Shown: positions 2,308-21,556 of the stretch, piece after piece
How positions within the stretch are numbered: position 1 is the stretch's first letter
How the letters are laid out: each line of letters begins with the position of its first letter
From: Macrostomum lignano
Taxonomy: Eukaryota
Assembly: GCA_002269645.1 (NCBI GenBank)
Contig: NIVC01000743.1
Coordinates: forward strand, 1-35,572
Direction: 5' to 3'
DNA length: 35,572 nucleotides
Translations under genes and position numbers: made by a program
Notes under the pieces: model-generated
Seen by the model: only the letters and a program-made list of their open reading frames with translations
Databases searched by the model: none
What the model was told of the DNA's origin: nothing

Positions 2308-2868
2308 GATGCTGCCTTCCGTAAGTGCAAGGAGCTGCTCAGCAGGGCGCCGGTGCTCGCACATTTCGATGAGCGGCAGCCACTAGTGCTGGAGTGCGAC
2401 GCTTCTCCATACGGCATCGGTGCTGTCATCAGCCATCGAATCTGGAGAACGATGCGCTGGCAGTGGTGTTCGGAGTGAAGAAGTTTCACACGTATCTATA
2501 CGGCCGGCAGTTCACGCTGATCAGCGATCACAAGCCGTTGTTGGGGCTGCTGCATGAGTCGAAGCCGATTCCTGCCATGGCTTCCAGCAGAATCCAGCGG
2601 TGGGCGCTCACCCTGGCCGCCTACAGCTACTCCATGGTGCACAGGTCGGGCAGATCGCTGCTGCGTGCGGATGTTCTCAGCCGTCTGCCGCTGCCAGAGA
2701 GGCCGAAAAGTTCACTGGTACCAGCGGATTTCGTGCTGCTCATGGACATGCTGGACGAAGTTCCGGTGACGGCACGACACATTCGAGCATGAACAAGGAC
2801 GGACCCCGTGCTGTCCAAGGTGTTGCGATCAGCCGAGTCCGGCCAGTGGCCGGCGAGACCGCCTCCGT
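2308..2868 (+). pseudogene. Decayed Ty3/gypsy pol fragment (RT-linked RNase H)
   Basis: AFRKCKELLSRAPVLAHFD..LECDASPYGIGAVISH, then after a frameshift ALAVVFGVKKFHTYLYGRQFTLISDHKPLLGL..RIQRWALTL..ADVLSRLP. No RT core or integrase is present. Confidence 0.9.
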
Positions 2869-3001
<133 letters not shown>

Positions 3002-3155
3002 TTAAAACACGAGTAGTTTATAGTATCGGTGGCAGACAATAAAATTTGTAGAAAGGCTGTTGTCAAGCATGGTGGCGCATTTGATTATTGAAATAATTGG
3101 ACCTCCTTAGAGTTCAGCGCAGCTATTTCAGCCTTTGAAATCGTAAACAACTTGA

Positions 3156-3161
3156 TTTATT
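3156..3161 (-). terminator. Candidate polyadenylation signal (AATAAA) of the mucin gene
   Basis: Plus-strand TTTATT, downstream of the inferred stop codon. Confidence 0.35.
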
Positions 3162-3483
3162 ATTAGAAATTTTATAAACAAATTAAAAAACATTTACGCA
3201 TTTAAACTTTCGTCAAGCCTTTTTGGAAAAAGTTCTGCTAACTGGGGCGGCGACAACGCGATGAAGGCAGGTGTCAGACCCGTGTATAAACGTGCTGTGT
3301 CAGCAGGATGAAACTTACAGTAGAAATATGGTAGTAAAATGTCTAAATAGTCTTATAAAAATTGGTTTGTGTGGGCTATTTTAGTTTCAACATGAGCAGA
3401 TGCAGAGTACAGAGTGCAGAAATGTTGAACGCTCATCATAATTAGTCTCTGCTCTTTCGCTTTGTTAATCACGTCCGGGACCT

Positions 3484-3551
3484 TCAGGCGGCGTGGCTGT
3501 CCGGCCTATTGGTGCCGGGGCCGTCCACTGGGTCGTAGAACTGAGCCCTGT
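3484..3551 (-). CDS. Mucin putative last coding exon ([22 protein letters not shown])
   Basis: Acceptor atttttcccaacattgcag, phase 1 matches, TGA at 3486-3484, AATAAA about 320 nt downstream. Confidence 0.55.
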
Positions 3552-6500
3552 CTGCAATGTTGGGAAAAATTGTTTGCTATTATAGTTACTAATTATACTG
3601 TATTAGTGAATAGTGACTGTGTCCTTGATCTGACTGTCTTAAGATTCATCGATTTATCATGGCTTGTTCACCAGATTTAGGATATTACAAATGCTAGACA
3701 TAACAAGAAATAGAAATAATCTGACATGGGCATGTAGGGCATGTAAAGCGGATGGCTGCTGCACTGGCAGATAGCGCCAACCCTGGAGGCCGGCTGTGGC
3801 TGCAGAACGCATTGGCAAAATGGGAAACTCTCAGATTTTGTCATCAATTCTCAATATTTCACCTTCTGAACATCCGAATCGCAAATCGAACAAATCTAAG
3901 TTTTGTTCGAGGTGAGCTCACAAGTTTATTGAGCTAGCTTTCATGAAGTGCTACCTCACTCACTCACTCATTCACACTCACTCACTCACTCACTCACTCA
4001 CTCACTCACAAACTCACTCACTCACCCAATCACTTACTCACTCATTCACCCACTCACTCATTCACTCACTCACTCACTCACTCACTCACTCACTCACTCA
4101 CTCACTAACTCACTCACTCAATCACTCACTCACTCACTCACTCACTCACTCACTCACTCACTCACTCACTCACTCACTCACTAACTCACTCACTCACTCA
4201 CTCAATCACTCACTCACTCACTCACTCACTCACTCACTAACTCACTCACTCACTCACTCACTCACTCACTCACTCACTAACTCACCCACCCACTCACTCA
4301 CTCACTCACTCACTCACTCACTCACTCACTCACTCACTCACTCATTCACTCACTCACTCACTCACTCACTCACTCACTCACTCACTCACTCACTCACTCA
4401 CTCACTCACTCACTCACTCACTCACCCAATCACTCACTCACTCACTCACTCACTCACTCACTCACTCACTCACACACTCACTCACTCACTCACCCAATCA
4501 CTCACTCACTCACTCACTCACTCACTCACTCACTCACTCACTCACTCACTCACTCACTCACTCACTCACTCACTCACTCACTCACTCACTCACTCATTTT
4601 AATCAAACATCAAACAGCAAAGAAGAAAACCTTGCTCGCCTGCATGAAGCAGTACTTTAAATTCAAGGCTTTTGAAGCTAGGGACTAAAAGCTGAGTCCC
4701 GGCAGAACATAAATATAGAAAGAAGAATTGTGATTCCATTCCGGCACTATTTTCCCATTTGTCCTATTTTCAAACCCAAATTTCGGTGTCGCAGTTCGCT
4801 GTTTCTCTGCTTTCAGTAGCAAAAGGAAGAACGCAAAGGCTATTTTATAGAAGAAAGGCAGCTGGATGACCCGTAAAGAACTTGCTGTCGGTGGAGCAAT
4901 AAAGAAAATTTTCATTCCAATTCGAAATTGAGCTGTGCTTAATAGTGAAGCTTCCATTCTCAATTGCTGGCTGTGGAAAAAGCTAAAGGTTTTACTTTCA
5001 ATTTTGAAGCTGTGCATTCAGTTTTGACAAAAATGATTAACGCAAGCATATGTATGGAGATATAGCTTCGTTTTTAAAGTGTAGACATCCTAAAAGGTGC
5101 AGCTAGTTTCTAGCGGCTTGCTTGTAACCAAGGTTAAGAAAGAACAATCTAAATCCCCACGCTGAGTCCCCAACCTGGTCCGTACGGCTCCTCAATCCGG
5201 TAGTTCGTCTTCAAGTTCAGTTCGTCCCTCAGGCGCCTGGTCTGCACAGCGTAGACCTGCAGGTTTTAGGAGGGTTTGTGCGGTTTTAGCGGACTTCCCA
5301 TATCACCCAGTTGCTTAGGTAATAGCTTCCGCGAGCTTCTTCATGTAACAAGAACAACTTCATGTAACTAAAACAAGGATTTTAAGTTGTCCCCGACTGC
5401 TACTTAGTCGGTATATTTAACATTGAGCCATTTCTTAGCCAAGATGCATGTACCGTGCCAGGAAAATTTCTGATCAAATGGTGCAAGTCTGAAGAAAATC
5501 GGTTGAGCCAATTTTTCTGAAATCTATCGCATAGCTAGATAGATAGATAGATAGAGACAGACAACTCATTTTTAGTACTAGTCGGTATAAGCAAAGAAAC
5601 ACAGCTAATGGGCACAAGCGCTTGTGCAGTATTGCATACAGCAGCATTCAAGTCGCTTACGATGATAAAGATGACGAGGACAAGCAGGAAAAGTCCGCCA
5701 ATTACTGCAACCAGAATGATCAGGATGGTGTAATCCTGCGACACGGCCTCAGGGCCACCGCTTGTGGCTGTGCCGGCACTGGCTGCCGCAGTCGTGGCCG
5801 CTGCCCGAGTGGTGGATTCGACGGCCGTTGTCGTTGAGCTGGTACTGGTGAGGCTTGTGACGGCTGTGAATTTAGGGAACCATTCGAAATTATTTCATAT
5901 GGTATATACATGTCAAAGGCACAAAAAGCGCTTGCAATTTAAGCTGCTTTGCTCACCCGAAGATCCAATGTTATCGATGATGACACCACCCAGATCTGTT
6001 GCTTTCAAACCTTTTGTGAGAAGCTCGATAATAGAAGCTGCTGTGTTTGTAGACGTGTCTCGAACCACAAGGTTTCCACTGATGACAACACTTCCCGACT
6101 TAAACTGTAAGTTTACTGCGTTTTGCAGTTCACCATAAAGCGAAGTTGACCTGGATGATTTCATAATGGTCTCAAAGGCGTAGTTAGCCAGCTGCTTGTA
6201 GCGCCAACTGTTCGGGTCTGCATAGTCATCGAACCACTGCAAATTTGAAAAGCGGAACGAGAACGGCACGGTCTTGACGTTCTTAAACACAGGCTGGTAG
6301 TTGGACGGACAGATGCAAGACGTCGTTGTGGGCGCAACAGTCGTAGTTGTAGTCGGAGTTGTAGTAGTGGTGGAAGTAGTCGTTGTTGTTGTGGTGCTTG
6401 TAGTTGGAGTAGTAGTGGTAGTAGTCGGAGTGGTTGTGGTAGTAGTCGGAGTGGTTGTTGTAGTAGTCGGAGTGGTTGTGGTAGTAGTCGGAGTGGTTGT

Positions 6501-9500
6501 GGTTGTAGTCGGAGTGGTTGTGGTTGTAGTCGGAGTGGTTGTTGTAGTAGTCGGAGTGGTTGTGGTAGTAGTCGGAGTGGTTGTGGTAGTAGTCGGAGTG
6601 GTTGTGGTAGTAGTCGGAGTGGTTGTAGTAGTAGTCGGAGTGGTTGTGGTAGTAGTCGGAGTGGTTGTGGTAGTAGTCGGAGTGGTTGTGGTAGTAGTCG
6701 GAGTGGTTGTGGTAGTAGTCGGAGTGGTTGTGGTAGTAGTCGGAGTGGTTGTGGTAGTAGTCGGAGTGGTTGTGGTAGTAGTCGGAGTGGTTGTGGTAGT
6801 AGTCGGAGTGGTTGTGGTAGTAGTCGGAGTGGTTGTGGTAGTAGTGGTTATTGATGTAGTCGTTGTCAAACACACTGCTGGAACTGTCGTGAAGCAGCCG
6901 TTAATGATGAGGTACATTTGGAAATTCGTGCTCGTTGCTGAAGCCGTCTTGAGTGTGCGCGGCAAAATTATGAACTGAGCTACTGGAAAGCCGATGTCGA
7001 AGCACAGATCCGCCGCAGTGTCTGAGGATACCAAGCTAGCAAGATTTTGGAAAGGTGCCGCATAGAACTGCTTGTATCGAATCGTAGCCTCTCTAACGTT
7101 TCCAGAGAGACACAACTAGAATTATGGCAGGGTAGAGCATTTAAGACCGATGCGTTCTCTGCACTGCTTAGAGAAATAAAGCTAAAAAAGCTTACCCTGT
7201 CAATATAAATTCCACTACGACAGTTATTAATGGTAAGATCCACAGTCAAATATCCATCCGTACCGGTGCGAATATTGAAGCCAGTAGCATCACTGAAGCT
7301 GGTGGCCCCCGTGATATAGTCCATTGGCAGGAGCGATGAGTTCGACAGAGCGTTTACCATTGGACAGACTGAATAAACAATTTGCTTTTAGCCGTTAGCG
7401 TTCAGAATAAACAAACAATTTTGTCTTTACATAAAGGATAGTGCATTTGACTTACACGTGGTTCCCACAGTCGTAACGGTCGTGGGGGTTTTGGCAGTAG
7501 ATGAACTGCTGGTCGTCGTGCTTGACGTGGTTGCGCTAGTGCTTGTCCTCGTGCTGGTCGTTGGAGTGCATCCCGGAATCGGCATGAAGCAGCCATACAC
7601 CGACAGGAAGAAGTTGTAAGTGCTAGATCCGGTGGCTGCAGAAGACTTCAGTTCCTTCGGTGCGATGATGATAGAGCTCACGTTGAAGTTCAGGTCGTAG
7701 CACAGAAGTCCTGGACCGTCTTGAATAATAGTTGTGGACTGAACCAGTGGCAGGTATGACTGAGATGCCGATGTCTGGTAGATGAGGTCAGCTCTCTTTA
7801 CATTACCGCCGATAAGGCAAACCTAAAAAGTGCAAGGATTTTTCGGTTACAGATTGAATCGTGACGCGACTCTAATGACCAATTAAATCAATGCTACAGA
7901 GACTAATTGTACCTGTGTGATGTATTCTGGTCTGCGGCAGTTGTTGGATGTCAAATCGATGAAAAGTCCTTCGCCGGGTGCTCTAGACATTGTGTAGCCC
8001 AATACAGGAGAGAATGTTGCTCCACTGATGGCCCAGGAAGGCAGCAACGATGTATCAGCGATCGCATCGACAGCAGGACAAACTAAGAGAAATATTCAAG
8101 TTCAGTATACGATAACAAAAAGTTTTAAAAGAAATTAAGCCAAAGTACTTACATGTTGGCTTTGGTGTAGTAGTTGCTGTCGTAGTTGAACTTATTGTTG
8201 TCGATGTGGTGGAAGCTGTTGAAGTAGTTGGTGTTGTTGTTGCAGTTGACTTTGTTGTCTCCGTTGTGGAAGCAATTGGTGTTGTAGTTGTGGAAGATGT
8301 TGGCAGTGTAGTAGTTTTCGTCGTTGTTGGTGTAGTTGTAGTTGTAGAACTTGTTGATGGTGTCAATGTGCTTGAAGTTGTAGTAGAGGTCGAAGTTGTT
8401 GGAGATGTAGTCGATGTGCTGGTTGTTGGAGTCGTCGTTGTGGGTGTTGTAGTCGTACTCGTTGTTGTTGAAGTCGTGGTTGAAGTTGTCGTTGGAGTAG
8501 TAGTTGTGGTGGTAGTCGTTGGAGTCGTGAGGCAGGCGCTTGTTAGAGGCGTGAAGCAGGCATCGACTCTAACAAAGAAATTGAACATACTGTCGGTCGA
8601 GAACGATTTGAGTCGCAGAGGCACAATTGCTATTTTAGCTACAGTCTCTTTGTTGAGAACTGTGTAGCACCACGGACTCGTAGTGTCAACTGAGATGCTC
8701 GAAGCAGACAAATCAGGTGAGTACTTTTCAGTGCTTAATCTTGCAAACAGCAAGTTGGCTTCTCGCACGTTACCAATCAGACAAATCTGAAAGAATAAGC
8801 GGACATTCCAGTGTATGGAAACATGTGAGGAAAATATAGTTCAAGACACGTCATAAATGACATACAAACGCGTACCCTATCAACGACTATTGGCGGCCGA
8901 CATGAGTTTACAGTCAGATCAATCTCAAGGCTTCCGTTCTTCAGAGGAAGTCTGTAGCCATAGAATGGGTCGTATTCTCCACCAGTTACAGCGAATGAAG
9001 GAATCAAGTTGGACTGGTAGAAGCCGTCAATAGCGCAAGACGTTGTGGTTTCCAGTGTTGTGGTCAGAGTAGTTCTTGTTGTCGTCGATGTCGTAGTGCT
9101 GGTCGTTGGAGTCGTCGTAGTGGTAGATGTAGTCGGTGTAGTTGTAGTAGTGCTTGTTGTAACAGTAGTCGGCGTGGTCGGCGTTGTAGTAGTTGTAGTC
9201 GTGCTGGTAGTGCTGGTGCTGGTCGTTGTGGTCGGCGTGGTCAGACACGTGGAGTTAAGAGGATTGATGCAGGCCATGAGAGACACGAAGAACTGGTACT
9301 CGGTTGAGTTGTAGCCAGGCTTTGTAGCTTGAGGAACAATCACTAGTTCAGAGGTGAGTCTATTAAGATCATAGCACAGAGGATCTCCAGTTGAAGAAGT
9401 CTTTCCTGGCGTGTTGAAGTCGGGTACCAGTTTGTCGCTGGTTGGCTCTCGGATCAAGATTTGTGCATTGAACACGTTTCCAGCGATGCACAGCTGCAAT

Positions 9501-12500: not shown

Positions 12501-15500
12501 CATGAAGGCGTAGTTGTAGTAGCAGTGGTCGTTGTGCTCGTCGTCGTGCTCGTCGTTGATGTCGACGTGGTGGGTGTAGTTGTCGCTGTTGATGTTGTCG
12601 TCGGTGTAGTCGCAGTCGTTGTTGTGCTCGTCGAAGTGGTTGGTGTTGAAGTTGTCGTTGAGGTAGTCGTCGTAGTACACGATACTGGCAGAGGAGTGAA
12701 ACAGGCCTCGATGGAAAGGAAAAACTGATACAACGAATCGCCTGAGGCTGCGCTTTTAAACTCTTTCGGAACAATTCTCAGCTCGGAAATGGGAAGCATT
12801 GGGTAGTAGCACAGCGGTGTAGCAGTGTCACTTGTATTGTACAGCGACTGCTCGAAGAAGTCCCAGTAGAGGGTGGAGCCTTGACGGATGATAAGATCAG
12901 CTCGTTTTACATTACCGCCGAACAGACAAATCTAAAACGGAACGCATCTGATTTTAGCATTTGAAATTGCTATTTTATTTAAATATCAAGAAAAGAACAA
13001 GTTACATACCCTATTAATTAGGATCGGTGTGCGGCAACCGGATACAGAAATGTCCACATAGACGCCTTCCACTGAGCCTCTGGGTACATTATATCCTGTT
13101 AACGGATTATAACTAGGAGCATTGATAGAAGAACTAGGAATCAAGACGCCGTTGAGTCCGTTCACCAAACAGGATGTTGTTGTCGACGGAGTGGTTGTAG
13201 TAGTGCTAGTTGCTGTTGTGGTCGATGTCGGCGTTGTGCTAGTAGTTGTGGGAGTTGTTGTTGTGGATGAAGTAGTCGACGTTGTAGAAGTCGTCGTTGT
13301 CGACGTCGTTACAGGTTGAGTTTGACAGGCTGTAGTTAGAGGCGCGAAACAGCCCTCAAGGCTCAGGAAGAATAAATAATTCGTTTCCAGCGACGAGCTG
13401 TTCAGTAGTGCGACTGGCGTGATTGCAATGCTAGATATGTTTGCCCCGAGAGTTATGCAAAGAGGAGTCAACGAAGACGAGACAGATACCAAATTGGATT
13501 CCAAGACAAGATCGAACCGACCGGTCGGATAAGTCGTCTGGGTAGACACCGTTACCTGCCTTACATTTCCTGTCACACAAACTCTCGTTAGGTATGTAGG
13601 AACAGGATTACATCCTCCAGCAGTCAAATCTATGATAAGATCTCGTCTCGGACTCACTGGCATCTCGTATCGACCAGTTACATAAGTGGCGCCGGTAATG
13701 GCCCAATCAGGTATGTACTTTCTATCACTAAGGCCATTGAGTGCTGGACAAATTGTAGGCTTGACAGTAGTTGTAGACGTTGTTGTCGTTGACGTTGTCG
13801 TAGGAGTTGTAGTTGTGCTGGTAGTTGTAGGTGTTGTAGTGGTTGTTGAAGTAGTCGTCGGTGTTGTGGTAGTGCTACTAGTTGTAGTAGGCGTTGTAGT
13901 TGTGCTTGTAGTACTCGAAGTTGGAGTGGTTGAAGTGGTAGATGTAGATGTTGAAGTGGAGGTTGTTGGTGCGACTGTGGTAGACGTCGTCGTTGGAGTT
14001 GTAGTGGTAGTAGGAGTAGTCGATGTCGATGTTGTTGGTGTAGTTGTGGTTGACGTCGTCGTGGGTGTCGTTGTCGTTGACGTCGTCGTGGGTGTCGTTG
14101 TTGTGGTGGTGGTTGTTGTAGTCGTAGTAGTGAGACAGCTGGCATTTAAGGCAGTGAAGCAGCCGTAGATATTCATATAAAATGTGAAATCTGATCCTGT
14201 TCCAGGAGTCATTGTCTGTGGCATCAGCTGCAAACCGGTGATGTCTCTGTTCACTTGAAGACAAAGCAGCCCGTTTCCACCCGTAACGGATGCAGGGAAA
14301 AGCACAAGCCTAGAATCCAGATTGTTCTGTACTGAAATCAGAGTCGTTTGCACATTTCCACCGAGACAGACGCTAAAAATTCGAATTGGCGCACGACATC
14401 CGCGAGCAGAGATATCCACCACAATAGAACCAAGTGGTTGAACAACGAATGCTCCTGCTCGATTAATAGATGCCCCAGAAATGTCTTGATCTGGTATAAA
14501 CTGCGCGCTTGTCATTCCGTCGACCACAGGACAGTCTAAAAATAATATTTTTACAGACAAATGATGATTATAACAAAAAACAATAAAATGAAACGAAAGG
14601 GTTAGATTTCTATTACTACTAATTCTTACAGGTCGTAGGTGTAGTTGTAGTAGTAGAAGTTGTTGTCGGTGTCGTCGGAGTAGTGCTTGTCGTTGTGCTG
14701 GGTGTCGTTGAAGTAGTTGAAGGCGTGGTTGTAGCTGTACTGGTTGTTGTAGGAGTTGTAGGGGTTGTTGTTGGTTCTTTTGTTGTTGTTGATGTTGTTG
14801 TGCTTGTTGTGCTTGAAGTTGGTGTTGTCGTCGGTGTAGTGGTTGTTGGGGTCGATGTCGTCGGTGTTGTTGTAGTCGATGTCGTTGGTGTTGTTGTGGT
14901 TGATGTTGTTGTTGAGGTTGTGGGAGTAGTTGTAGTTGACGTTGTTGATGTCGTCGTAGTCGTTGTAAGACAGGACGCGTTTAAGTTGCTGAAGCAGCCA
15001 TAGATCGATAAGAAGAAGTAGTAGGAACTTGCTGTCGTCTTTAATAGCTGCGGTTCTACCTGAACACTGATGACATCTCTGTTTACATCAATGCACAGAA
15101 TTTCTCCTTCCTTTGCAGTGAGCGTAGCCGAGTCAGGGATCAGGTAGGGAATCACGTCTGTGTTGAATCGCACCAGAACAAATGCTTGAGCAACGTTTCC
15201 AGCTATGCAAACCTAAAATTTAGGTTAGTGTGATATTATAGTCAATGATTGTGTCAGTTGGCAGAAATGCTGCTTTTTCTTACTCTTAGAACCCGAGTTG
15301 CGGGACGACAGCCTCTCGACGAGATGTCGACAATGACAGACGTTCTTTGCTGAAGTGTAAACGCTCCTGAGACTTGACGAGTGCTGTTACCGAATGTCGC
15401 AATGTCGATAGCGGGGATCATCGAAGGGTACAGCATACCATCGACGCTGGGGCAATCTGCGATTGAGCGCCAGATTTAGGCAATATTAAAATCTTATTTC

Positions 15501-18500
15501 TTATAGAGTCGATATACAAAGCCAAGTTAACAGGCCTAGTATGGTGTCCTTAAAGCATATGTACTAGTCCCTGTAGCGCTACACATTTAAACTAATTAGT
15601 TCGTAAAAGAAATAAAGCGTTGGTATGTATTTTTCTTTGCTAGAACTGTTTCTTTTTTTAGTTTTTAATTTATTATTCTTGTTTTGTGTTCTTTGAAATT
15701 CGTGCGTTGTTGTCGCAAGTACATTTTTTAGTTTGTCAACTGGTTGCTGGTATAGAATTTAACATATGCTCGTAATTTATTTAGATCTATTCTCTTGATG
15801 AAGAAAAAAACACTTTTATTTAGCAATTGATATCAATTTGATGTTTGTTTTATTATTACTACCAGTCATAGCAAAGCTACTGCAATATCTGATTCTAAGT
15901 TAAGGCTAAAGTTAAAGCAACGACATTAGGACTATCTAACCTAGTCAAAAACAATTTCGCAATCATATCTTATCAAAGGAAGAAGTCAGAAACTAGCAAC
16001 TCTATCGAAGTTAAGCGGCTATGCCGTAGGCCCCTGCAAAATCGTCAACTAATTTAAAGTATCTTTATTTCCTTTCTAACAACAAATACAGGCTGCTTGC
16101 TGAGAAAACTACATTTTATATGCTTTTAATAGCGTGACTCGGCTATAGGCGATAGGGTAACAAGAGGTTTCGGTGAATGTGACTTTGGCAAAAGAGGTTT
16201 TGGCGACTGGCTGATAAGTTCGTGATGCCTGTTACATAGGTGAATATAATATGCTCGCATTGTTCAACACTGCAGCTGACCATGCGTGGTCTACAGGTTG
16301 CGTGCGTTGGCTGGGATCTTGCAGGTCAGGAGTTCGAATTTTTGTGTACTTTTTTTAGTTTTTGGTGCTGACATATGACTGCAGGTTGCACAACCGATTA
16401 GTGGGTGTGGTAATTTTTTGAGTAGCATGTAAGTAGCAAGAAAATTTCAGTGCTACTAAACCTGTTGTGTATGGATGATCATATTGTTTGTCATTCAATC
16501 TGGTCCGAGTCGATCAATAAGTAACCATCTGCTTTTTAGGCTTTCCTTTTCGCTACAGTTTTAGGCTTTCCTTTTCGCTACAGTTTTAGGCTTGAAGAGA
16601 TTTAGTGTGCCCTGGGTCTGTACACAGGCATAAACTCGATGGTAGTGTAGGTTTGAGATGATCGCTGTTGTTAGCAGTTCAACAAACACAAATCTTATAG
16701 TTGACTAACCGCTACAGCGTGATACGTCCCGTTCGATAACTTTAGATACATGTAAAGCTCAAATGTCTAGAAATCAACTTACAGGTTGTACTCGGGGCTG
16801 TTGTAGTCGTACTTGTTGTTGGTGTCGTTGTAGTCGGCTTCGTTGTCGTGGTCGTCGACGTTGTTGTTGGAGTTGTTGATGTAGTTGTCGACGTCGACGT
16901 CGATGTCGTTGTTGGAGTAGTTGTAGTCGTCGAAGTGGTCGGTGTAGTGGTCGTCGTCGTTGAAGTCGTAGTCGTAGTCGGAGTCGTAGTAGTTATGGTA
17001 GTTGTAGGTGTGGTCGTCGATGTAGTAGTTGACGTAGTAGTCGTTGGCGCAGTGCAAGTGCTCGGCAGTGGTTCGAAGCAACCCTCAATGGTGACGGAGA
17101 ACCGGAAGTTTGTCGCAGCCGAATCATAAGACTTTACCAATTGAGGAGCGATTCTCACTGCCGATATGTTGAATCCGATCGAGTAGCAAAGCGAGTCAGC
17201 CATGGCGTCCCCGGTGGTGGTGAAAGATAGCTCAGAAAAGACCAGATTTGCAGTGACGCTTCTTTGCAAACGGATGTTGGCTTGTTTGATGTTTCCGTAA
17301 AGACAGATCTGAAATGCACCAGGTTGAGTTATGGTCGGGTATGAGCTACAATCGGACTCATCAGACATTTATGGTTATTAATAGTAACTGTCCGTATACC
17401 CTCTCAATGTAGACTGGATTTGGTCGGCAGTTTACGGCAGACAAATCAATGTCCATAAATCCGGACGCGGACCTTGAAATGCTGTATCCAAAGATAGGGT
17501 CAGACGAGACTCCGCTGATAGAGTAGGATGGAATGTAGGTATTGCTCGAAAGTCCATTTATTAGTGGGCAGACTGAAAAAGTGCGTAGTAGTTGAAGGTC
17601 GGTAAAAAAGTTGAAAAAAAATACCATCGAAAAATCGCGAAACAAGAAACTTACTCGTTGGCTTTGGAGTCGTAGTAGTTGTTGTAGTTGTTGTCGGAGT
17701 GGTGGTTGTTGGCGGTGTAGTAGTTGTGGATGTTGTTGGTTTGGTGGTTGTCGTTAACGTTGTAGCAGTCGTTGTGGGAGTGGTTGATGTCGTTGTAGTC
17801 GAGGTAGTGGAAGTCGTCGTTGTTGGCGTCGTTGTTGGCGTAGATTGAGTGGTGGTTGTCGTTGATGGTGTCGTCGTCGTAGTTGTCGTTGGTGATGTCG
17901 TCGATGTTGTTGTCGTAGACGTAGTTGTGGTAGGCGTAGTTGTGGTAGGTGAAGTTGTGGTTGATGTGGTAGTTGGAGTAATTGTTGTTGATGTTGTCAA
18001 TGTAGTCGATTTGGTGGTAGTAGACGTTGGGGTAGTGGTAGTGCTGGTAGTGCTTGTAGTTGTTGTTGGCGTTGTCAGACACACTGCGGAAAGCGGCAAG
18101 AAGCACGCGTTGATCGTGAGGTAGAACTGGTACTGGGTTTTGTTCGGTGCCGACGACTTGAACTCCAATGGAAAAATTCCTATCTTGGCCGCAACTAGTT
18201 TAATGTCGTAGCACAGATCTCCAACATCGCTCGATACGGATGCTGATCTCGGCACAGGGACGAATGGCCTATCGGATGTTTCACCGTACAAAATGTTGGC
18301 CCGTTTTACAGTGCCACTGATACAGATCTGAAAAAACAGTATATAGAATTAAATTTTCCACAAATAATAAAAAACGTTTTTTTACTTATATGAGTAACGA
18401 TTTGATCGACGAACTTACACTTTCAATTAGAATTGGGCTGCGGCAACTTCCCAGTACCAGGTCAATTTGCATGACGTCATTTTGGTAAACCAGCCAGCCG

Positions 18501-20824
18501 CGAAGTGGATCATTCGTTGCGTCTGCCACGGCAGTCGTCGGAATGTAGGAGTAGTCCGACATGCCGTTTACGATGCGACAGTCTAAAATTTTTATGGTTG
18601 ATTCGTAGGCTTCGCTTCTCATGTCATCAACGGCAGTATCGGATTTTTTTGTTGAGAAACTGCCACTTGGCTTTAGCGGCCTATTTTTCTAATATAAATT
18701 TCTTAGTTCCTAACACTGCACTCACAAGTCGTAGTGGTGGGCGTTGTTGTCGTGGTGGTTGTCGGCGTTGTGCTGGTGGTTGTGGTGGATGTCGTCGGAG
18801 TTGTAGTGGGTGTTGTCGGCGTCGTTGTAGTAGTAGTAGATGTAGTCGTCGGGGTCGTAGTAGTGCTGGTAGTGGTAGAAGTTGTAGTGCTTGTGGAGGT
18901 AGTTTGGCAGCTGTCATTAACCGGTGTGAAGCAGCCGTCGATGGTGAGGAATACCTGGTAGTTGGTGGCCGAGAGGGCTCCGGACTTCAGTGCGACTGGA
19001 TAAAAGGCAAGCCGAACCATCCTCGTATTCAGCTCATAGCACAGCCTGGCGCCAGTGACATCAGAAAACAGGGAGCTGGACGGCTCAAATGGGACGTAGC
19101 GGCTACTGGTGGTAGGCATGTACTTTACCAAGGCTCGCATCACGTTTCCAGTCATGCACAGAGTGTTCACAAAAATTTCAGTAGTTCGACAGCCATCGAC
19201 AATGAAGTCGAACTCCATCTGATCGTTGAAACTGATCAGAAAATCACCAGACATTCCCGGCCGTCCACCGGAGATGGATTTGTCCGGGATGTAAGACTTC
19301 TGCGACAGACCGTTCACGTAGTTGCAGACTGAAATTCGCAACATTGAGGGCGTGTTGGTGATGAAGCTCGAAAGATAACTGATAAAAATTTCGCTAGCAA
19401 ATAAAAGACATCTTATCATAAAAAAGTGCCAAACTCACCGGGCGTGGAAGTTGGCAGTGGCGTCGTCGTAGTTGAAGTCGACGTCGTGCTTGAAGTAGTT
19501 GTTGGCGTGGTTGTGGTCACGGTGGTGGTGGGAGTAGTCGGAGTTGGTGTTGTGAAGAAGTACTTGGTGGTGAGCGGCACGCATGAACAGAAGGGCTCGG
19601 CTGTTGTGAAGCCGGCGGCAGGCGTTGCCAGGACGGCCAAAACGGCTACTGCTGCGGCGATGCCTGTCGAAAGGTGATCGAAAATCAATGTGCTGCTTGT
19701 TGAATTTCATTAGCACTCGGCAAGGGGACCGAAGTACCAACAGGCGTTTTAACTCAGGCAATTTGGTCTAGGTACTCCAATGGTTATATGTGCAGTGTCT
19801 CTAAACTTAGTCGTTGCTAGTTACTAAAATGGTGGTCGTGAGTTTCCTAAGTACCAACCATTCAGTGGTGGTGATTTTCACGCTTTTTTAAAGTAAGTAA
19901 ACTTGGTCACTTCGTTACCGTTAATAGTATGTTATTGTCGATTGGACCGTTTGAACTCGAAAGTATATTAGGATACCTTTTCTGTAGCAGAAAACTAGAA
20001 ACGAAGTTATCAAGTCAATATTTTTTTCTCTATGATTCAGAGACCTGTTTTGTGAACAGAAAGAAGCTTATCTCCCCCCTACTGATAGTAGTCTTGCTAG
20101 AATCATATTTAAATATGTCCATTTTTGGCAGGTACAACAGTAGCAAAGATAAAAAATCAGCACATCCAGGCCACATAAGCAGTGAGTAAGCTTTTTCATC
20201 AGGGGGGGGGGGCGTAGCCCAGCGGTCTAGCGCAGGCTCTGGTGTGCCAGCGACCCAGGCTCGATTCCAAGTGCAGTCACATTAATTTGGGGCTGAATTG
20301 GAATCTCGGCTTGGCTCTGCTCGTGCAATTAACGGCCTTGAGAGCCAACCCCCCAAGGCGCAGTGAAGTGTACATGCCTAACGATAAAATAAAGTTAGGG
20401 CTGCTGTACACTCCTGTGTGAGTGTGTGCCTGCGTACGTATCCGCGCGCTTGTGTGCCTGCTCAGGGGAGTCGGTGGAATCCCTCTGCTTCTAATAAAAA
20501 AAAACATTTTTATCATTTTTGTGTAAAATTCAGTAATTCAATAATTAATATGCTCGTATTTGAATGAGTTTTACTATAAAGAAAAAAGGAGCTTTAAAGT
20601 AACAACTCATTTCGCATCGGTTCCAGTAAAAATCATGCAGGCTTTTATGAGCTCTAATGTACGCTATGATTTTTTTTGTTCAGTTGAAAATAAGCATATA
20701 CCGACCGTGAGCAGCGCTAAACGCATTTTATTTTTAAGGTCTACCAATTGTTAAAAGTATGAATAGCTTAAAATAGACGGGCCCTGGACTCACTCAGCAT
20801 TGCAGGTTGAGCAGAGATGGACAT
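3484..20824 (-). CDS. Giant multi-exon transmembrane mucin-like protein (~3,355 aa): SP - [6-Cys domain + PTS]x13 - SEA - TM - short cytoplasmic tail
   Basis: 24 hand-called GT-AG exons whose phases all match (CDS sum 10,068 nt, divisible by 3). Internal exons are well supported by the repeated motif. The first exon and the last two are less certain. Confidence 0.85.
3954..4597. repeat. (TCAC)n microsatellite, ~640 bp
   Basis: Near-perfect tetranucleotide run; it produces spurious THSL ORFs. Confidence 0.98.
5175..5256 (-). CDS. Mucin exon 23: end of TM and juxtamembrane tail ([27 protein letters not shown])
   Basis: Phase-0 acceptor cctgcag, basic residues right after the TM, GC3-rich codons. 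The donor (AG/GTTGGG) is weak. Confidence 0.7.
5661..5863 (-). CDS. Mucin exon 22: Ser/Thr/Ala stalk + transmembrane helix
   Basis: [43 protein letters not shown]; acceptor ttcacag, donor GTAAGC; phase 1-0. Confidence 0.88.
5957..7115 (-). CDS. Mucin exon 21: module 13 C-half + VNTR PTS + SEA domain
   Basis: LCLSGNV..IINGCF..C, then (TTTTPTT)n, then a ~105-aa region with [16 protein letters not shown], which fits the SEA pattern; donor GTGAGC; phase 0-1. Confidence 0.9.
6415..6846 (-). repeat. Coding 21-bp VNTR (~20 copies, TTTTPTT)
   Basis: Plus-strand unit GTAGTAGTCGGAGTGGTTGTG, almost invariant. Confidence 0.95.
7196..7368 (-). CDS. Mucin exon 20: module 13, N-half
   Basis: [24 protein letters not shown]; donor GTAAGC; phase 1-0. 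Confidence 0.88.
7456..7822 (-). CDS. Mucin exon 19: module 12, C-half + short PTS
   Basis: [28 protein letters not shown]; donor GTAAGT; phase 0-1. Confidence 0.88.
7913..8082 (-). CDS. Mucin exon 18: module 12, N-half (not in ORF track)
   Basis: Own translation: [56 protein letters not shown]; phase 1-0. Confidence 0.87.
8153..8786 (-). CDS. Mucin exon 17: module 11, C-half + PTS
   Basis: [25 protein letters not shown]; donor GTAAGT; phase 0-1. Confidence 0.9.
8876..9493 (-). CDS. Mucin exon 16: module 10 C-half + PTS + module 11 N-half
   Basis: [43 protein letters not shown]; phase 0-0. Confidence 0.9.
9605..9765 (-). CDS. Mucin exon 15: module 10, N-half
   Basis: [24 protein letters not shown]; phase 1-0. 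Confidence 0.87.
9882..10476 (-). CDS. Mucin exon 14: module 9, C-half + PTS
   Basis: [32 protein letters not shown]; donor GTAAGT; phase 0-1. Confidence 0.9.
10758..11480 (+). mobile_element. Solo LTR (723 bp) in a mucin intron
   Basis: Starts TGTTG, ends CAACA, flanked by TTAC on both sides (10754-10757 and 11481-11484). It is GC-rich within an AT-rich intron and has an internal AATAAA near 11202. Confidence 0.8.
11552..11721 (-). CDS. Mucin exon 13: module 9, N-half
   Basis: [17 protein letters not shown]; donor GTACGT; phase 1-0. Confidence 0.87.
11837..12236 (-). CDS. Mucin exon 12: module 8, C-half + PTS
   Basis: [26 protein letters not shown]; phase 0-1. Confidence 0.88.
12341..12931 (-). 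CDS. Mucin exon 11: module 7 C-half + PTS + module 8 N-half
   Basis: [41 protein letters not shown]; donor GTGAGT; phase 0-0. Confidence 0.9.
13010..14535 (-). CDS. Mucin exon 10: modules 5 and 6 complete plus module 7 N-half
   Basis: Single 1,526-nt open exon holding 2.5 domain copies and two PTS tracts; donor GTATGT; phase 1-0. Confidence 0.9.
14630..15212 (-). CDS. Mucin exon 9: module 4, C-half + PTS
   Basis: [26 protein letters not shown]; donor GTAAGA; phase 0-1. Confidence 0.9.
15284..15456 (-). CDS. Mucin exon 8: module 4, N-half
   Basis: [22 protein letters not shown]; donor GTAAGA; phase 1-0. Confidence 0.85.
16537..16593. repeat. 25-bp tandem duplication (TTTTAGGCTTTCCTTTTCGCTACAG, ~2.3 copies)
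   Basis: Read directly from the sequence. Confidence 0.85.
16783..17308 (-). CDS. Mucin exon 7: module 3, C-half + PTS
   Basis: [23 protein letters not shown]; donor GTAAGT; phase 0-1. Confidence 0.9.
17400..17572 (-). CDS. Mucin exon 6: module 3, N-half
   Basis: [23 protein letters not shown]; phase 1-0. Confidence 0.88.
17655..18327 (-). CDS. Mucin exon 5: module 2, C-half + PTS
   Basis: [25 protein letters not shown]; donor GTAAGT; phase 0-1. Confidence 0.9.
18419..18582 (-). CDS. Mucin exon 4: module 2, N-half
   Basis: [22 protein letters not shown]; donor GTAAGT; phase 1-0. Confidence 0.88.
18726..19328 (-). CDS. Mucin exon 3: module 1 (whole domain + PTS, no internal intron)
   Basis: [35 protein letters not shown] then Thr tract; AG/GTGAGT; phase 1-1. 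Confidence 0.9.
19439..19663 (-). CDS. Mucin exon 2: signal peptide core ([17 protein letters not shown]), CxC motif, short PTS
   Basis: Acceptor ctttcgacag, donor GTGAGT, phase 1-1, hydrophobic Ala/Val/Leu stretch. Confidence 0.85.
20202..20504 (+). mobile_element. tRNA-headed SINE-like element in mucin intron 1
   Basis: A-box TAGCCCAGCGG (20215-20225) and B-box-like GGCTCGATTCC (20258-20268) at tRNA-like spacing, then ~230 nt of body and an AATAAAAAAAAA tail. No canonical cloverleaf. Confidence 0.6.
20794..20824 (-). CDS. Mucin exon 1 (putative start: [11 protein letters not shown])
   Basis: ATG at 20824, 31 nt, phase-1 donor GTGAGT. It joins exon 2 in frame and completes a signal peptide. 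Confidence 0.55.
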
Positions 20825-21003
20825 CTCCAGTTTTGGTAGGAGGTAAGACGGACGGACGGCTGTCAGCCCGCTGTTGCGGCACGGCGACTGTTGCGTTTGG
20901 GGCGAAGAGACTTGCTGCGAAAGTCGCTGGAGCTGTTCTGCAGGGCGCGCCCGGTTCTTTCGTTTCGCGGTCGAAGCGGCTGGAGGCGGCGCGACGGGGC
21001 GAC

Positions 21004-21010
21004 TTAAATA
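21004..21010 (-). promoter_or_regulatory. Candidate TATA-like box (TATTTAA) of the mucin gene
   Basis: AT-rich heptamer in GC-rich context, ~180 nt upstream of the proposed ATG. Confidence 0.35.
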
Positions 21011-21556
21011 GGCGAGTTTCCAGCAGAGCTGCGGCTGTTCGCAAGTAGTCCAGGTGAAGCTCGTCCATCGGCTGGCTGCCTCTCCTCTCTCCCTCTCTCT
21101 CTCCATCGCGAGCCCCCATTGTTGCCAACCTCTAGAAGTTTCCAGTATTCTCTCTTCACGTTTCCAGTAGCGCGGGAGCCGAGGAGTGGTCACATTGTCA
21201 GAGAGACGCCCACACTCTGCTGTCTCAGCGATGGGTTTCAATGGCTGGCAAACCTTTTTTAGAGGGCTACCTTCAGTGTTCGTAAAAAGCATTCACTACA
21301 CAGTTTACCTCAGTAGTCATTAAACTCTTGCTTAAACCGCAGGAAGACCAGGCGGCATGGACTGGACAAAAAGCAGAAAGAAGGAAGACAATGTGCACTG
21401 CTTAAGTTCAATAGCAATGCCTGTTATGGACCATTGAGCATCGCTCTGCGTTTTTTTACGCTTACACTGCAGCATAGCGCTGCTTTAGCTCGGATATCTG
21501 TGGCCTGAAATGCGACAATATTCAAGTCTCACAACATTGAAAATATCACGCCACCT

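What the first reader, a model, noticed from the sequence alone, without database searches (positions are those of the whole stretch)
3484..20824. Complete ~3,350-aa membrane-tethered mucin hidden across about 20 fragmentary ORFs
Seen: the ORF track splits this gene and starts most pieces in introns, yet all 24 exon phases chain with no stop. Established: vertebrate TM mucins (MUC1, MUC3, MUC12, MUC17) have SP-PTS-SEA-TM-tail, mostly with one long PTS region. Gel-forming mucins (MUC2, MUC5AC) interrupt their PTS with CysD domains. Inference: this protein is a hybrid, with a domain-interrupted PTS on a SEA/TM anchor. It is a candidate epidermal or gut glycocalyx, mucus or adhesion component.
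Basis: partly seen in the sequence, partly recalled or inferred. Interest (0 to 1): 0.7.

Follow-up and report, generated by a model that had tools for sequence, protein, structure and literature searches.

The report
Flatworm membrane mucin with discoidin-like beads
The window holds one complete 24-exon gene on the minus strand, most likely from the flatworm Macrostomum lignano, that encodes a 3,355-residue cell-surface mucin. Thirteen copies of an uncatalogued beta-sandwich domain alternate with threonine-rich sugar-carrying stretches on a SEA/transmembrane anchor, a design so far credited mainly to vertebrates.

Summary
On the minus strand, 24 exons (20824 to 3484, all introns GT-AG) join into a 10,068-nt reading frame with a single terminal stop, giving 3,355 aa.

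The order of parts is:
- signal peptide
- 13 modules of about 140 aa, each with 6 cysteines
- 14 Thr/Ser/Pro linkers between and around the modules (1,286 aa, 70% Thr)
- a SEA domain with a GSVV self-cleavage motif
- one transmembrane helix
- a tail of about 47 aa

The module has no Pfam match and no sequence match in the PDB. AlphaFold2 (pLDDT 87) and Foldseek place it in the discoidin / galactose-binding-like fold. Only about 20 relatives exist among 1.84 billion representative proteins. They are fragmentary, uncharacterised Macrostomum lignano predictions (one is 98% identical), a chiton 'mucin-2-like' protein, and unnamed metagenome fragments.

Module 13, the last linker and the SEA domain lie in one uninterrupted exon. 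A paralogue's gene model carries signal peptide, modules, SEA half, TM and the same juxtamembrane tail.

The interrupting domain is not CysD, and the gene is not an orthologue of any vertebrate MUC gene.

Function is inferred, not shown: a glycocalyx or barrier role, possibly lectin-like beads, and a sheddable ectodomain. I class it as a new variant of a known kind, of moderate interest.

The parts
20794..20824 (-). Exon 1: ATG and the first 10 codons ([10 protein letters not shown]), followed by a GTGAGT donor; phase 1
   Evidence: Exon 2 has no ATG. This donor gives the phase that exon 2 needs. The start codon is ambiguous among the in-frame ATGs at 21292, 21106, 20824 and 20800.
19439..19663 (-). 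Exon 2: hydrophobic core of the signal peptide ([18 protein letters not shown]), the conserved [18 protein letters not shown] motif, and the first PTS stretch
   Evidence: The same motif follows the signal peptide of paralogue P0001. The related copy L001 has the same phase-1 exon without an ATG.
18726..19328 (-). Exon 3: module 1 (no internal intron) plus PTS
   Evidence: E 4e-47
18419..18582 (-). Exon 4: module 2, N-terminal half
   Evidence: The exon 4/5 junction ..IE(S/T)ICISG.. is also seen in the M. lignano prediction P0003.
17655..18327 (-). Exon 5: module 2, C-terminal half, plus PTS
17400..17572 (-). Exon 6: module 3, N-terminal half
   Evidence: The junctions PKPTICPLING and YIERICLYGN are present in P0003 and P0006.
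16783..17308 (-). Exon 7: module 3, C-terminal half, plus PTS; followed by a 1,326-nt intron
15284..15456 (-). Exon 8: module 4, N-terminal half
14630..15212 (-). Exon 9: module 4, C-terminal half, plus PTS
13010..14535 (-). Exon 10 (1,526 nt): modules 5 and 6 complete, their PTS linkers, and the N-terminal half of module 7. The introns have been lost here.
   Evidence: E 9e-42 and 2e-43
12341..12931 (-). Exon 11: module 7 C-terminal half, PTS, and module 8 N-terminal half
   Evidence: P0004 (PAA49141.1) is 98.4% identical over residues 1604-1853 and carries the exon 11/12 junction [11 protein letters not shown].
11837..12236 (-). Exon 12: module 8, C-terminal half, plus PTS
11552..11721 (-). 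Exon 13: module 9, N-terminal half; followed by a 1,075-nt intron
9882..10476 (-). Exon 14: module 9, C-terminal half, plus PTS
9605..9765 (-). Exon 15: module 10, N-terminal half
   Evidence: The donor was chosen by homology between modules (aggGTAAAG).
8876..9493 (-). Exon 16: module 10 C-terminal half, PTS, and module 11 N-terminal half
8153..8786 (-). Exon 17: module 11, C-terminal half, plus PTS
7913..8082 (-). Exon 18: module 12, N-terminal half
7456..7822 (-). Exon 19: module 12, C-terminal half, plus a short PTS
7196..7368 (-). Exon 20: module 13, N-terminal half
5957..7115 (-). Exon 21 (1,159 nt): module 13 C-terminal half, the longest PTS (184 aa), and the SEA domain, all in one open frame
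6400..6845 (-). Near-perfect tandem array inside exon 21: 21 nt x 21.2 copies at 97% identity, encoding (PTTTTTT)n
6084..6095 (-). Codons for G3193-S-V-V3196, the SEA self-cleavage motif (the canonical site is G|SVVV)
   Evidence: In the AlphaFold2 model, G-S sits in the turn between strands 66-77 and 80-90. Cleavage itself is not shown.
5661..5863 (-). Exon 22: Ser/Thr/Ala-rich stalk and the transmembrane helix ([22 protein letters not shown])
   Evidence: Kyte-Doolittle peak 3.47
5175..5256 (-). Exon 23: juxtamembrane cytoplasmic segment [27 protein letters not shown]
   Evidence: The junction ..VIFII|VYAV..RR.R.. is conserved in paralogue P0001 (VIFIIVYAVYSRRMRSDL).
3484..3551 (-). Exon 24: end of the tail ([22 protein letters not shown]) and the TGA stop at 3486-3484. 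This is the least certain exon.
   Evidence: It rests on splice phase and a good acceptor only. If the weak donor at 5175 is not used, the tail would end in ..[10 protein letters not shown].
3156..3161 (-). AATAAA about 320 nt downstream of the stop; a candidate polyadenylation signal
   Evidence: Read from the sequence. Inference only.

Best explanation
This is one intact gene for a type I membrane mucin of a macrostomid flatworm, Macrostomum lignano or a very close relative.

Shown by the sequence and the tools:
- an N-terminal signal-peptide-like segment
- an ectodomain of about 3,250 aa in which 13 diverged copies (26-38% identical) of a roughly 140-aa six-cysteine beta-sandwich domain alternate with 14 Thr-rich PTS linkers
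- a membrane-proximal SEA domain with a GSVV motif
- one TM helix
- a tail of about 47 aa whose juxtamembrane part is conserved in a paralogue

Inferred mechanism:
1. The protein enters the secretory pathway.
2. The SEA domain cleaves itself at G3193|S3194 in the ER. The huge ectodomain then stays attached non-covalently to the membrane stub and can be shed under force, as in vertebrate SEA mucins.
3. The PTS linkers are densely O-glycosylated and become stiff bottle-brush rods. Roughly 1,286 aa x 0.25 nm gives about 0.3 micrometres in total.
4. The disulfide-stabilised discoidin-like domains sit as folded beads between the rods.
5. The product is a tall 'beads on a bottle-brush' glycocalyx element on an apical surface (epidermis, gut or another epithelium). 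It would give hydration, barrier and anti-adhesion or lubrication properties.
6. The beads are candidate lectin-like or protein-binding sites that cross-link the coat or dock secreted material.

The module units have symmetric intron phases (1-1). The array therefore probably grew by tandem duplication of an exon pair, and skipping a whole module would keep the reading frame.
For: - Gene model: 24 exons, all introns GT-AG, one stop, 3,355 aa.
- Exactly 13 ordered module halves on the minus strand and none elsewhere.
- Intron positions and phases are conserved across modules.
- Six invariant Cys across 13 modules that are only 26-38% identical.
- pN/pS = 0.26 against the related M. lignano copy L001.
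- Linkers are T 70.5%, S 11.9%, P 10.4% over 1,286 aa.
- SEA scores 38.1 bits against Pfam's cut-off of 26.4.
- The SEA model has beta-alpha-beta-beta-alpha-beta order with G-S in the hairpin. Its best Foldseek hits are MUC16 SEA5 (7sa9), 1ivz and 2e7v.
- There are only two strongly hydrophobic segments: the N-terminus and residues 3285-3308.
- Module model: pLDDT 87.2, pTM 0.83, all-beta.
- Foldseek matches the module to the muskelin discoidin domain (E 3.8e-6), IFT25, neuropilin b1, factor V/VIII C domains and CBM32.
- Paralogue A0A1I8G2V1 (P0001) carries signal peptide, modules, the second half of a SEA domain, TM and the same VYAV..RR.R tail in one gene model.
- Splice junctions 4/5, 5/6, 6/7 and 11/12 recur in independent M. 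lignano predictions.
- M. lignano has a lectin-positive glycocalyx; the paper read here (PMC6410801) names no protein of it.
Against: - No transcript or protein data were available, so the start codon, the last exon and the isoforms are inferred.
- No SignalP, TMHMM or O-glycosylation predictor was available. Only hydropathy and composition were used.
- SEA cleavage, glycosylation, tissue of expression and any ligand of the modules are untested.
- The SEA model is of only moderate confidence (pLDDT 66.6, 3-sequence alignment).
- The discoidin assignment is by fold. TM-scores are 0.5-0.6. Direct profile comparison of the module with canonical F5/8 type C domains is not significant.
- The related public copy L001 has a somewhat different module order, so copy number may vary or the assemblies may be imperfect.
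Confidence: 0.78

Rival explanations
1. It is mainly a shed mucus or adhesion component. The TM/SEA anchor would serve only for delivery. After SEA cleavage the ectodomain is released and works in secreted mucus (gliding, prey capture, or the temporary-adhesion system), with the discoidin-like beads binding substrate or glue proteins.
For: - The GSVV motif and SEA fold allow release of the ectodomain.
- Distant relatives of the module sit in apparently secreted mucin-like or VWC/TIL proteins: the chiton 'mucin-2-like' P0007, and P0014 and P0018.
- Discoidin-fold domains are often ligand binders.
Against: - The TM helix and the juxtamembrane tail are conserved in a paralogue, which argues for a function at the membrane.
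- No VWD, C8, TIL or CTCK polymerisation domains are present.
- In M. lignano, footprints of the adhesive did not carry glycocalyx lectin label (PMC6410801).
Confidence: 0.2
2. It is a signalling or mechanosensing mucin, in the manner of MUC1 or yeast Msb2. Force on the ectodomain unfolds or dissociates the SEA domain, and the short tail relays a signal or drives endocytosis.
For: - The cleavable-type SEA domain lies next to the membrane.
- The juxtamembrane tail motif is conserved between paralogues.
- The tail has three Tyr, including a YDPV (YxxPhi-type) motif.
Against: - The tail is short and matches no Pfam domain above its curated cut-off.
- The last exon, which carries YDPV, is the least certain part of the model.
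- Nothing here tests signalling. This role is also compatible with the main explanation rather than exclusive of it.
Confidence: 0.12
3. The locus is really two or more genes, or the chain of exons is an artefact of choosing stop-free pieces.
For: - Public annotations of the related copy split it into at least two gene calls, of 964 and 290 aa.
- There are three long introns (1.1-1.3 kb) where a boundary could hide.
- M. lignano uses trans-splicing and operons (my own knowledge, not tested here).
Against: - Phases chain across all 23 introns with canonical sites.
- Exon 10 alone holds 2.5 modules. Exon 21 alone joins a module, the PTS and the SEA domain.
- No internal exon offers an ATG plus signal peptide.
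- Paralogue P0001 spans from signal peptide to tail in one model.
- The public fragments are explained by a contig end inside the gene and by frameshifted PTS translation.
Confidence: 0.06
4. It is a decaying pseudogene copy in a duplicated genome.
For: M. lignano carries several diverged copies. L001 is 88-97% identical, and P0003 is about 79% identical over modules 2-3.
Against: - 10 kb of coding sequence has no stop or frameshift.
- All 78 module cysteines (13 x 6) are kept.
- pN/pS is 0.26.
Confidence: 0.02

Closest known systems
Vertebrate SEA-type transmembrane mucins (MUC1, MUC3, MUC12, MUC13, MUC17; also MUC16)
   Same: - The order of parts is the same: signal peptide, PTS, SEA next to the membrane, single TM, short tail.
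- The G|SVV-type self-cleavage motif is present.
- A near-perfect tandem repeat (VNTR-like) lies in one PTS exon.
- The SEA model's best structural matches are MUC16 SEA domains.
   Different: - There is no sequence relationship outside the SEA profile.
- No EGF domains flank the SEA domain.
- The PTS is cut into 14 pieces by 13 folded domains, instead of one long block.
- The gene has many exons rather than one giant PTS exon.
[quoted passage not shown] This is probably an independent assembly of the same parts.
Gel-forming mucins with CysD-interrupted PTS (MUC2, MUC5AC, MUC5B)
   Same: Small Cys-containing globular domains are spaced along the PTS region.
   Different: - The interrupting domain is not CysD. 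There is no Mucin2_WxxW hit or any other Pfam hit. It has six Cys and a discoidin-like beta-sandwich fold.
- There are no VWD/C8/TIL or CTCK domains.
- It is membrane-anchored rather than polymerised.
Discoidin / F5/8 type C domains and the wider galactose-binding-like fold (muskelin, neuropilin b1, factor V/VIII C1-C2, CBM32, IFT25)
   Same: - The predicted fold matches (Foldseek E 4e-6 to 1e-3, TM 0.5-0.6).
- The N-terminal motif C-x-x-(L/V)-(N/D)-G-(L/M)...I-P...I-(S/T)-G-A echoes C-x-x-L-G-M...I-x-D-x-Q-I-T-A-S-S.
- Cys residues lie at both ends of the domain.
- The distant-relative profile A2 aligns end to end with canonical domains (hhalign 58%, E 1e-4).
   Different: - There is no Pfam F5_F8_type_C hit.
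- The direct profile comparison is not significant.
- Four extra conserved Cys are present.
- The canonical Trp and the TQG motif are absent.
- Any ligand is unknown.
Liolophura sinensis (chiton) XP_064614628.1 'mucin-2-like', and unnamed metagenome eukaryote proteins (P0011, P0015, P0017-P0022)
   Same: They carry the same domain family (A1 against A2: hhalign 98.8%, E 1e-16). The copies are again repeated and separated by Thr/Pro-rich linkers.
   Different: - Only the first and last Cys are kept.
- No SEA domain was found in P0007 or the other relatives scanned with Pfam, and I saw no TM segment in the sequences listed.
- Some combine the domain with VWC/TIL domains.
- Identity to the flatworm modules is about 25-30%.
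Macrostomum lignano paralogues (UniRef A0A1I8G2V1 'Membrane-associated protein'; A0A1I8IX78; A0A1I8FZS0; PAA49141.1)
   Same: - They share the module, the [18 protein letters not shown] start, the SEA/TM end and the VYAV..RR.R tail.
- PAA49141.1 is 98.4% identical over 251 aa.
   Different: - All are fragmentary or PTS-skipping predictions.
- Their automatic names (ZP, PKD, REJ, CUB, DUF3707) disagree with each other. For the three I scanned (P0005 PKD, P0009 REJ, P0023 DUF3707), Pfam does not reproduce the name.
- None shows the full 13-module protein.

Membership tests
SEA-type transmembrane mucin (as an architecture) | N-terminal signal peptide | tested here: met
   [28 protein letters not shown]|F has a Kyte-Doolittle peak of 2.19 at residues 1-32. 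A paralogue has a signal peptide of the same length before the same EPFCSC motif. No dedicated predictor was available, and the start codon is inferred.
SEA-type transmembrane mucin (as an architecture) | Long Pro/Thr/Ser-rich region(s) | tested here: met
   There are 14 linkers of 38-184 aa, 1,286 aa in total, with T 70.5%, S 11.9% and P 10.4%. One is a 21-nt x 21 tandem array.
SEA-type transmembrane mucin (as an architecture) | SEA domain next to the membrane | tested here: met
   Pfam PF01390 scores 38.1 and 35.3 bits against a cut-off of 26.4. The model's top Foldseek hits are MUC16 SEA5 (7sa9, E 4.7e-4), 1ivz and 2e7v. The model itself is only pLDDT 66.6.
SEA-type transmembrane mucin (as an architecture) | Self-cleavage at G|SVVV | not testable with these tools
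   The motif GSVVI is present at residues 3193-3197 and lies in the beta-hairpin turn of the model. Cleavage needs a biochemical test.
SEA-type transmembrane mucin (as an architecture) | Single TM helix and cytoplasmic tail | tested here: met
   Residues 3285-3308 have a hydropathy peak of 3.47, the only such segment besides the N-terminus. The basic juxtamembrane RRLR is conserved in the paralogue.
SEA-type transmembrane mucin (as an architecture) | Dense O-glycosylation of the PTS | not testable with these tools
   Only the composition is known.
Vertebrate MUC1 / MUC3 / MUC12 / MUC13 / MUC17 gene family (orthology) | Sequence homology beyond the generic SEA profile, flanking EGF domains, conserved tail motifs | tested here: not met
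   A phmmer search of the SEA region against PDB sequences found nothing. No EGF or other Pfam domain was found. All relatives found are from flatworm, mollusc or unnamed metagenome contigs.
Gel-forming mucins | VWD-C8-TIL assemblies, CysD (Mucin2_WxxW), C-terminal cystine knot | tested here: not met
   Pfam scans of all 13 modules, the first 940 aa and the last 449 aa found only SEA above threshold.
F5/8 type C (discoidin) domain, Pfam PF00754 | Match to the family profile | tested here: not met
   No hit for any of the 13 modules at E up to 10. hhalign of A1 against five canonical domains gave 0.2% probability.
Galactose-binding-domain-like / discoidin fold (structural superfamily) | Eight-stranded distorted beta-barrel or sandwich matching solved members | tested here: met
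   The AlphaFold2 model has pLDDT 87.2 and pTM 0.83, with 8 strands. Nineteen PDB matches reach E <= 1e-3, and almost all of them are discoidin/F5-8C, neuropilin b1, muskelin, IFT25 or CBM32 domains.
Galactose-binding-domain-like / discoidin fold (structural superfamily) | Homology (common descent) with canonical discoidin domains | tested here: inconclusive
   The link is transitive. A1-A2 is 98.8%. A2-F5/8C is 58%, E 9.9e-5, colinear from the first Cys to the last Cys. The direct A1-F5/8C comparison is negative.
Galactose-binding-domain-like / discoidin fold (structural superfamily) | N-to-C terminal disulfide and ligand-binding loops | not testable with these tools
Cys are invariant at positions 1, 47, 58, 98, 134 and 142.

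The most novel reading that the evidence does not exclude
Spiralian animals have their own mucin lineage. It is built on an unrecognised, highly diverged discoidin-like 'bead' domain interleaved with PTS rods. In macrostomid flatworms this array was fused independently to a cleavable SEA/TM anchor, which would be a second invention of SEA-type membrane mucins outside vertebrates. The product would be the main protein scaffold of the flatworm's surface glycocalyx, with the beads acting as lectin-like cross-linkers or as docking points for secreted material such as the temporary adhesive.
Probability: 0.3. Interest if true: 0.65.

Novelty: new variant of a known kind. Interest (0 to 1): 0.5.

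Why it matters
- Membrane mucins are usually described from vertebrates, and a recent paper states that SEA-type membrane mucins emerged there (PMC9578598). A complete flatworm example shows that the same solution (PTS rods, a cleavable SEA domain and a TM anchor) was reached in a distant phylum.
- This example has 13 copies of a domain that no library names. It adds a new domain family to the discoidin-like fold.
- It gives a full-length model for a gene that public annotation holds only as mislabelled fragments.
- M. lignano is a laboratory model with routine RNAi and in situ methods, and a lectin-defined glycocalyx whose proteins are not named in the literature I read (PMC6410801). The gene is therefore a directly testable candidate for the coat that protects and lubricates a soft-bodied animal's surface, and that may interact with its adhesive system.

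Tried and rejected
- Plus-strand reading. The plus-strand ORFs in the region are Val/Gly-rich mirror images of the Thr codons. I rejected them.
- Word-indexed protein searches. Neither the module profile nor the SEA-TM-tail sequence gave a hit. The exhaustive HMM search was needed. A later word-indexed search with the distant-relative profile A2 found only 9 unnamed metagenome fragments.
- PDB sequence searches. The module profile, the distant-relative profile and the SEA region gave nothing meaningful.
- Two of the 22 representative hits (P0012, P0016) are repeat-rich proteins that look bacterial (P0012 has an Lcl C-terminal domain), with only weak per-domain scores. I discarded them.
- CysD, VWD, TIL, EGF, ZP, PKD, CUB. 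None is found by Pfam in this protein. Pfam also finds no PKD, REJ or DUF3707 in the three relatives so named that I scanned. I treat the automatic UniProt names as unsupported.
- Exon 1 in the related copy L001. Only exon 2 is recognisable there, at 79% identity, with the same phase and no ATG. The counterpart of exon 1 lies beyond the fetched DNA.
- Alternative first exons further upstream, for example 22138-22048. These have good donors but do not yield a plausible signal peptide.
- Hidden modules in the long introns. There are none.
- Rfam and tRNA scans of the window found nothing.
- Literature. No paper names this gene (Mlig023086) or links a SEA domain to Macrostomum. Searches pairing M. 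lignano with mucin, single-cell data or glycocalyx turned up no description of a membrane mucin in the papers I checked.
- Mlig-ap1 and Mlig-ap2 adhesive proteins. I considered and rejected them as identities. As described in PMC8621496, they are secreted proteins containing VWD, C8 and TIL domains. Here there is a TM anchor and no VWD, C8 or TIL domain.

Full report
OBSERVATION

The plus-strand frames between 3.5 and 20.8 kb translate to Val/Gly-rich nonsense. The minus strand gives long Thr-rich stretches alternating with Cys-containing globular sequence, so the gene is on the minus strand.

I anchored each conserved peptide. I then listed all GT...AG pairs that keep frame without stops, and scored them. 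Nearly every junction had one clearly best pair (GTAAGT or GTGAGT donors, pyrimidine-rich YAG acceptors). The two ambiguous ones (17400 and 9605) were settled by homology between modules.

The core chain gave 3,242 aa without a stop. Reading the ends added four exons:
- an ATG exon at 20824-20794 (GTGAGT donor, phase 1)
- the TM exon at 5863-5661
- a juxtamembrane exon at 5256-5175
- a last exon at 3551-3484, ending in TGA

The full model has 24 exons, 23 GT-AG introns, and a 10,068-nt coding sequence encoding 3,355 aa with one terminal stop.

Eighteen introns are 70-143 nt. The other five are 404-1,623 nt, and the last of these holds a (CTCA)161 microsatellite.

A profile of the module, run on the six-frame translation of the whole window, finds 13 N-halves and 13 C-halves in strict alternation on the minus strand (E 1e-13 to 1e-47). 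Nothing else scores below E = 0.2. No module hides in the long introns, and the pattern cannot be due to chance.

ANATOMY

| Residues | Part |
|---|---|
| 1-28 | Signal-peptide-like segment (hydropathy 2.19) |
| about 33-50 | Short conserved motif [18 protein letters not shown] |
| 87-2934 | 13 modules of 133-142 aa |
| between and around the modules | 14 linkers of 38-184 aa; 1,286 aa in total; T 70.5%, S 11.9%, P 10.4% |
| 3119-3240 | SEA domain, with GSVV at 3193-3196 |
| 3241-3284 | Ser/Thr/Ala stalk |
| 3285-3308 | TM helix (hydropathy 3.47) |
| C-terminal about 47 aa | Cytoplasmic tail, starting just after the TM helix |

- The modules are only 26-38% identical to each other. All of them keep six Cys (positions 1, 47, 58, 98, 134, 142) and the motifs C-P-x-V-N-G-L-S...I-P...I-x-G-A, I-D-L...G-C-R, C-L-x-G-N-V, L-C-Y, P..L-K-S and Y-x-F-F-L-x-I-x-G-C-F-x-P-L...C.
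- The last linker contains a 21-nt x 21.2 array at 97% identity, encoding (PTTTTTT)n. It looks like a recent expansion. The other linkers are degenerate.
- Intron positions repeat. A phase-0 intron lies one residue before the third Cys in 10 modules. A phase-1 intron lies one residue before the first Cys in 9 modules.
- Exon 10 holds 2.5 modules with no intron. Exons 3, 11 and 16 have also lost one intron each.
- Each module unit is phase 1-1. This fits growth by tandem duplication of an exon pair, and it allows module skipping that keeps the frame.

ONE GENE, AND A LIVE ONE

- Exon 21 (7115-5957) is a single open frame. It contains the second half of module 13, the PTS array and the SEA domain. 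The anchor is therefore tied to the array without any splicing assumption.
- The TM exon follows after a 93-nt intron, in the right phase.
- The junction ..VIFII|[13 protein letters not shown].. is mirrored in the paralogue P0001 (..VIFIIVYAVYSRRMRSDL..). That gene model also carries a signal peptide, the EPFCSC motif, modules and the second half of a SEA domain.
- Junctions 4/5, 5/6, 6/7 and 11/12 appear in independent M. lignano predictions P0003, P0006 and P0004.
- Against the related genomic copy L001, module codons give pS 0.137, pN 0.035 and a ratio of 0.26. This indicates purifying selection.

ORGANISM AND PUBLIC RECORD

- The exhaustive profile search found 22 proteins among 1.84 billion representatives.
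- The best hits are Macrostomum lignano entries. PAA49141.1 (BOX15_Mlig023086g3, 290 aa) is 98.4% identical to residues 1604-1853.
- Its contig, NIVC01003964.1, ends inside the gene. There the annotation splits the locus into calls of 964 and 290 aa. That copy is 88-97% identical to the window and has a somewhat different module order.
- The window is therefore M. lignano or a very close relative (Platyhelminthes, Macrostomorpha), a species known to carry duplicated genome copies.
- The automatic UniProt names of the fragments (ZP, PKD, REJ, CUB, DUF3707) contradict each other. For the three fragments I scanned (PKD, REJ, DUF3707), Pfam does not reproduce the name.
- I found no paper on the gene.

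THE MODULE

- There is no Pfam hit for any copy at E up to 10, and no sequence hit in the PDB.
- AlphaFold2, using the 13 copies as the alignment, gives pLDDT 87.2 and pTM 0.83. The model is all-beta with eight strands, and has one low-confidence loop at residues 85-89.
- Foldseek against the PDB returns the muskelin discoidin domain (E 3.8e-6), IFT25/HSPB11, neuropilin b1, factor V/VIII C domains, CBM32 and CASPR2 discoidin. TM-scores are 0.5-0.6 and identity is 10-16%. This is the galactose-binding-like or discoidin fold.
- Outside Macrostomum, the family appears in a chiton 'mucin-2-like' protein (7 copies between Thr/Pro linkers). It also appears in unnamed eukaryote-like fragments from metagenomes, some of which carry VWC and TIL domains.
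- An alignment of these distant copies (A2) matches the flatworm profile at 98.8% probability, E 1e-16.
- A2 aligns end to end with five canonical F5/8 type C domains at 58% probability, E 1e-4.
- The flatworm profile itself does not align with the canonical domains.
- My reading is that this is a very diverged member of the discoidin-like fold. Common descent with F5/8 type C is likely but unproven, and it does not belong to the Pfam family as defined.

THE SEA DOMAIN

- Pfam SEA scores 38.1 bits against a cut-off of 26.4, and 35.3 bits in a longer query.
- A three-sequence AlphaFold2 model is only moderate (pLDDT 66.6). It shows the beta-alpha-beta-beta-alpha-beta order, with G-S in the turn between the second and third strands. 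In cleaving SEA domains that is where the G|SVVV break occurs (established knowledge for MUC1).
- Foldseek's best hits are human MUC16 SEA5 (7sa9, E 4.7e-4), the mouse MUC16-like SEA (1ivz) and a membrane-protease SEA (2e7v).

HOW IT MOST LIKELY WORKS

The architecture is shown. The following steps are inferred from established mucin biology:
1. Co-translational entry into the ER.
2. SEA self-cleavage, giving a non-covalent two-chain protein.
3. Dense O-glycosylation of 1,286 linker residues in the Golgi.
4. Display at an apical membrane as a structure of roughly 0.3-0.4 micrometres, in which stiff glycan brushes are punctuated by 13 disulfide-locked beads.

The coat would hydrate, lubricate and shield the surface. 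The SEA joint would let the ectodomain come off under force rather than tear the membrane. The beads, by analogy with other discoidin-fold domains, may bind sugars, lipids or proteins, and so cross-link the coat or dock secreted material.

M. lignano has a PHA-E/PHA-L-positive glycocalyx; the paper I read names no protein of it (PMC6410801). This gene is a candidate.

Rival emphases are a shed mucus or adhesion component and a signalling mucin. Both are compatible with the same anatomy, and I cannot separate them here.

COMPARISON AND NOVELTY

In architecture it is a SEA-type membrane mucin. By descent it is not a member of the vertebrate MUC1/3/12/13/17 group. It is not a gel-forming mucin, since it has no VWD, C8, TIL, CysD or CTCK domains.

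[quoted passage not shown] This flatworm protein is a counter-example in architecture, and most simply an independent assembly.

Three things are new:
- the full-length model
- the recognition of a 13-fold array of an uncatalogued discoidin-like domain
- the link between that domain and mucin-like proteins in a mollusc

I class it as a new variant of a known kind, with interest about 0.5.

SURROUNDINGS

Upstream on the same strand lie the C-terminal I/LWEQ exons of a HIP1/HIP1R-like gene. They are separated from the mucin start by about 11 kb that is dense in minisatellites. Downstream lies a frameshifted retrotransposon RNase H fragment.

Noticed in passing
window 32360-33800 (minus strand): C-terminal exons of a HIP1/HIP1R/Sla2-like gene. 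The I/LWEQ actin-binding domain scores Pfam E 6.4e-40. The gene is on the same strand as the mucin and upstream of it. Its intron holds a 22-nt x 21 minisatellite (33890-34343).
   Followed up: partly
window 29552-32338: A very large GC-rich minisatellite: 25 nt x 112 copies at 92% identity, open in all three plus-strand frames. This produces spurious ORFs of 900-1,160 aa. Further arrays lie at 24911-25794 (27 nt x 33), 26495-27058 ((TGTC)147), 27910-28482 (25/48 nt) and 28781-29023.
   Followed up: no
window 2266-2789 (plus strand), and 2869-3001: A frameshifted fragment of a retrotransposon pol gene (RT_RNaseH_2 and RT_RNaseH, each E 1.2e-13), just downstream of the mucin's 3' end. It is followed by (GATA)33.
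   Followed up: partly
window 3955-4596: (CTCA)161 microsatellite inside the last intron of the mucin gene. It gives long 'THSL' pseudo-ORFs on the plus strand.
   Followed up: no
window 6400-6845: The PTS array in exon 21 is 97% identical between its 21-nt units, whereas all other linkers are degenerate. This suggests a recent expansion, and probably length polymorphism between copies or individuals.
   Followed up: partly
L001 (NIVC01003964.1:21735-33109) against window 11540-19336: The related public copy carries an extra module-4-like segment between modules 1 and 2, and it is cut by the contig end. This could be a true difference in copy number between homeologues, or an assembly error.
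   Followed up: partly
window 20794-21292 (minus strand): The frame of exon 1 stays open upstream to 21292, with in-frame ATGs at 21292, 21106, 20824 and 20800. The longer versions would bury the hydrophobic segment 100-170 aa inside the protein. The transcription start is unknown.
   Followed up: partly
window 10477-11551 and 15457-16782 (introns 13 and 7): These two introns are about ten times longer than their neighbours. Intron 13 has GC-rich open frames on both strands. The one I scanned has no Pfam match. It may be an old insertion.
   Followed up: no
proteins P0011, P0019, P0021 (one 107,445-bp ENA metagenome contig): Three separate short 'proteins' carrying the distant form of the module sit on one long eukaryote-like contig. 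They are probably exons of a single multi-module gene in an unidentified animal.
   Followed up: no
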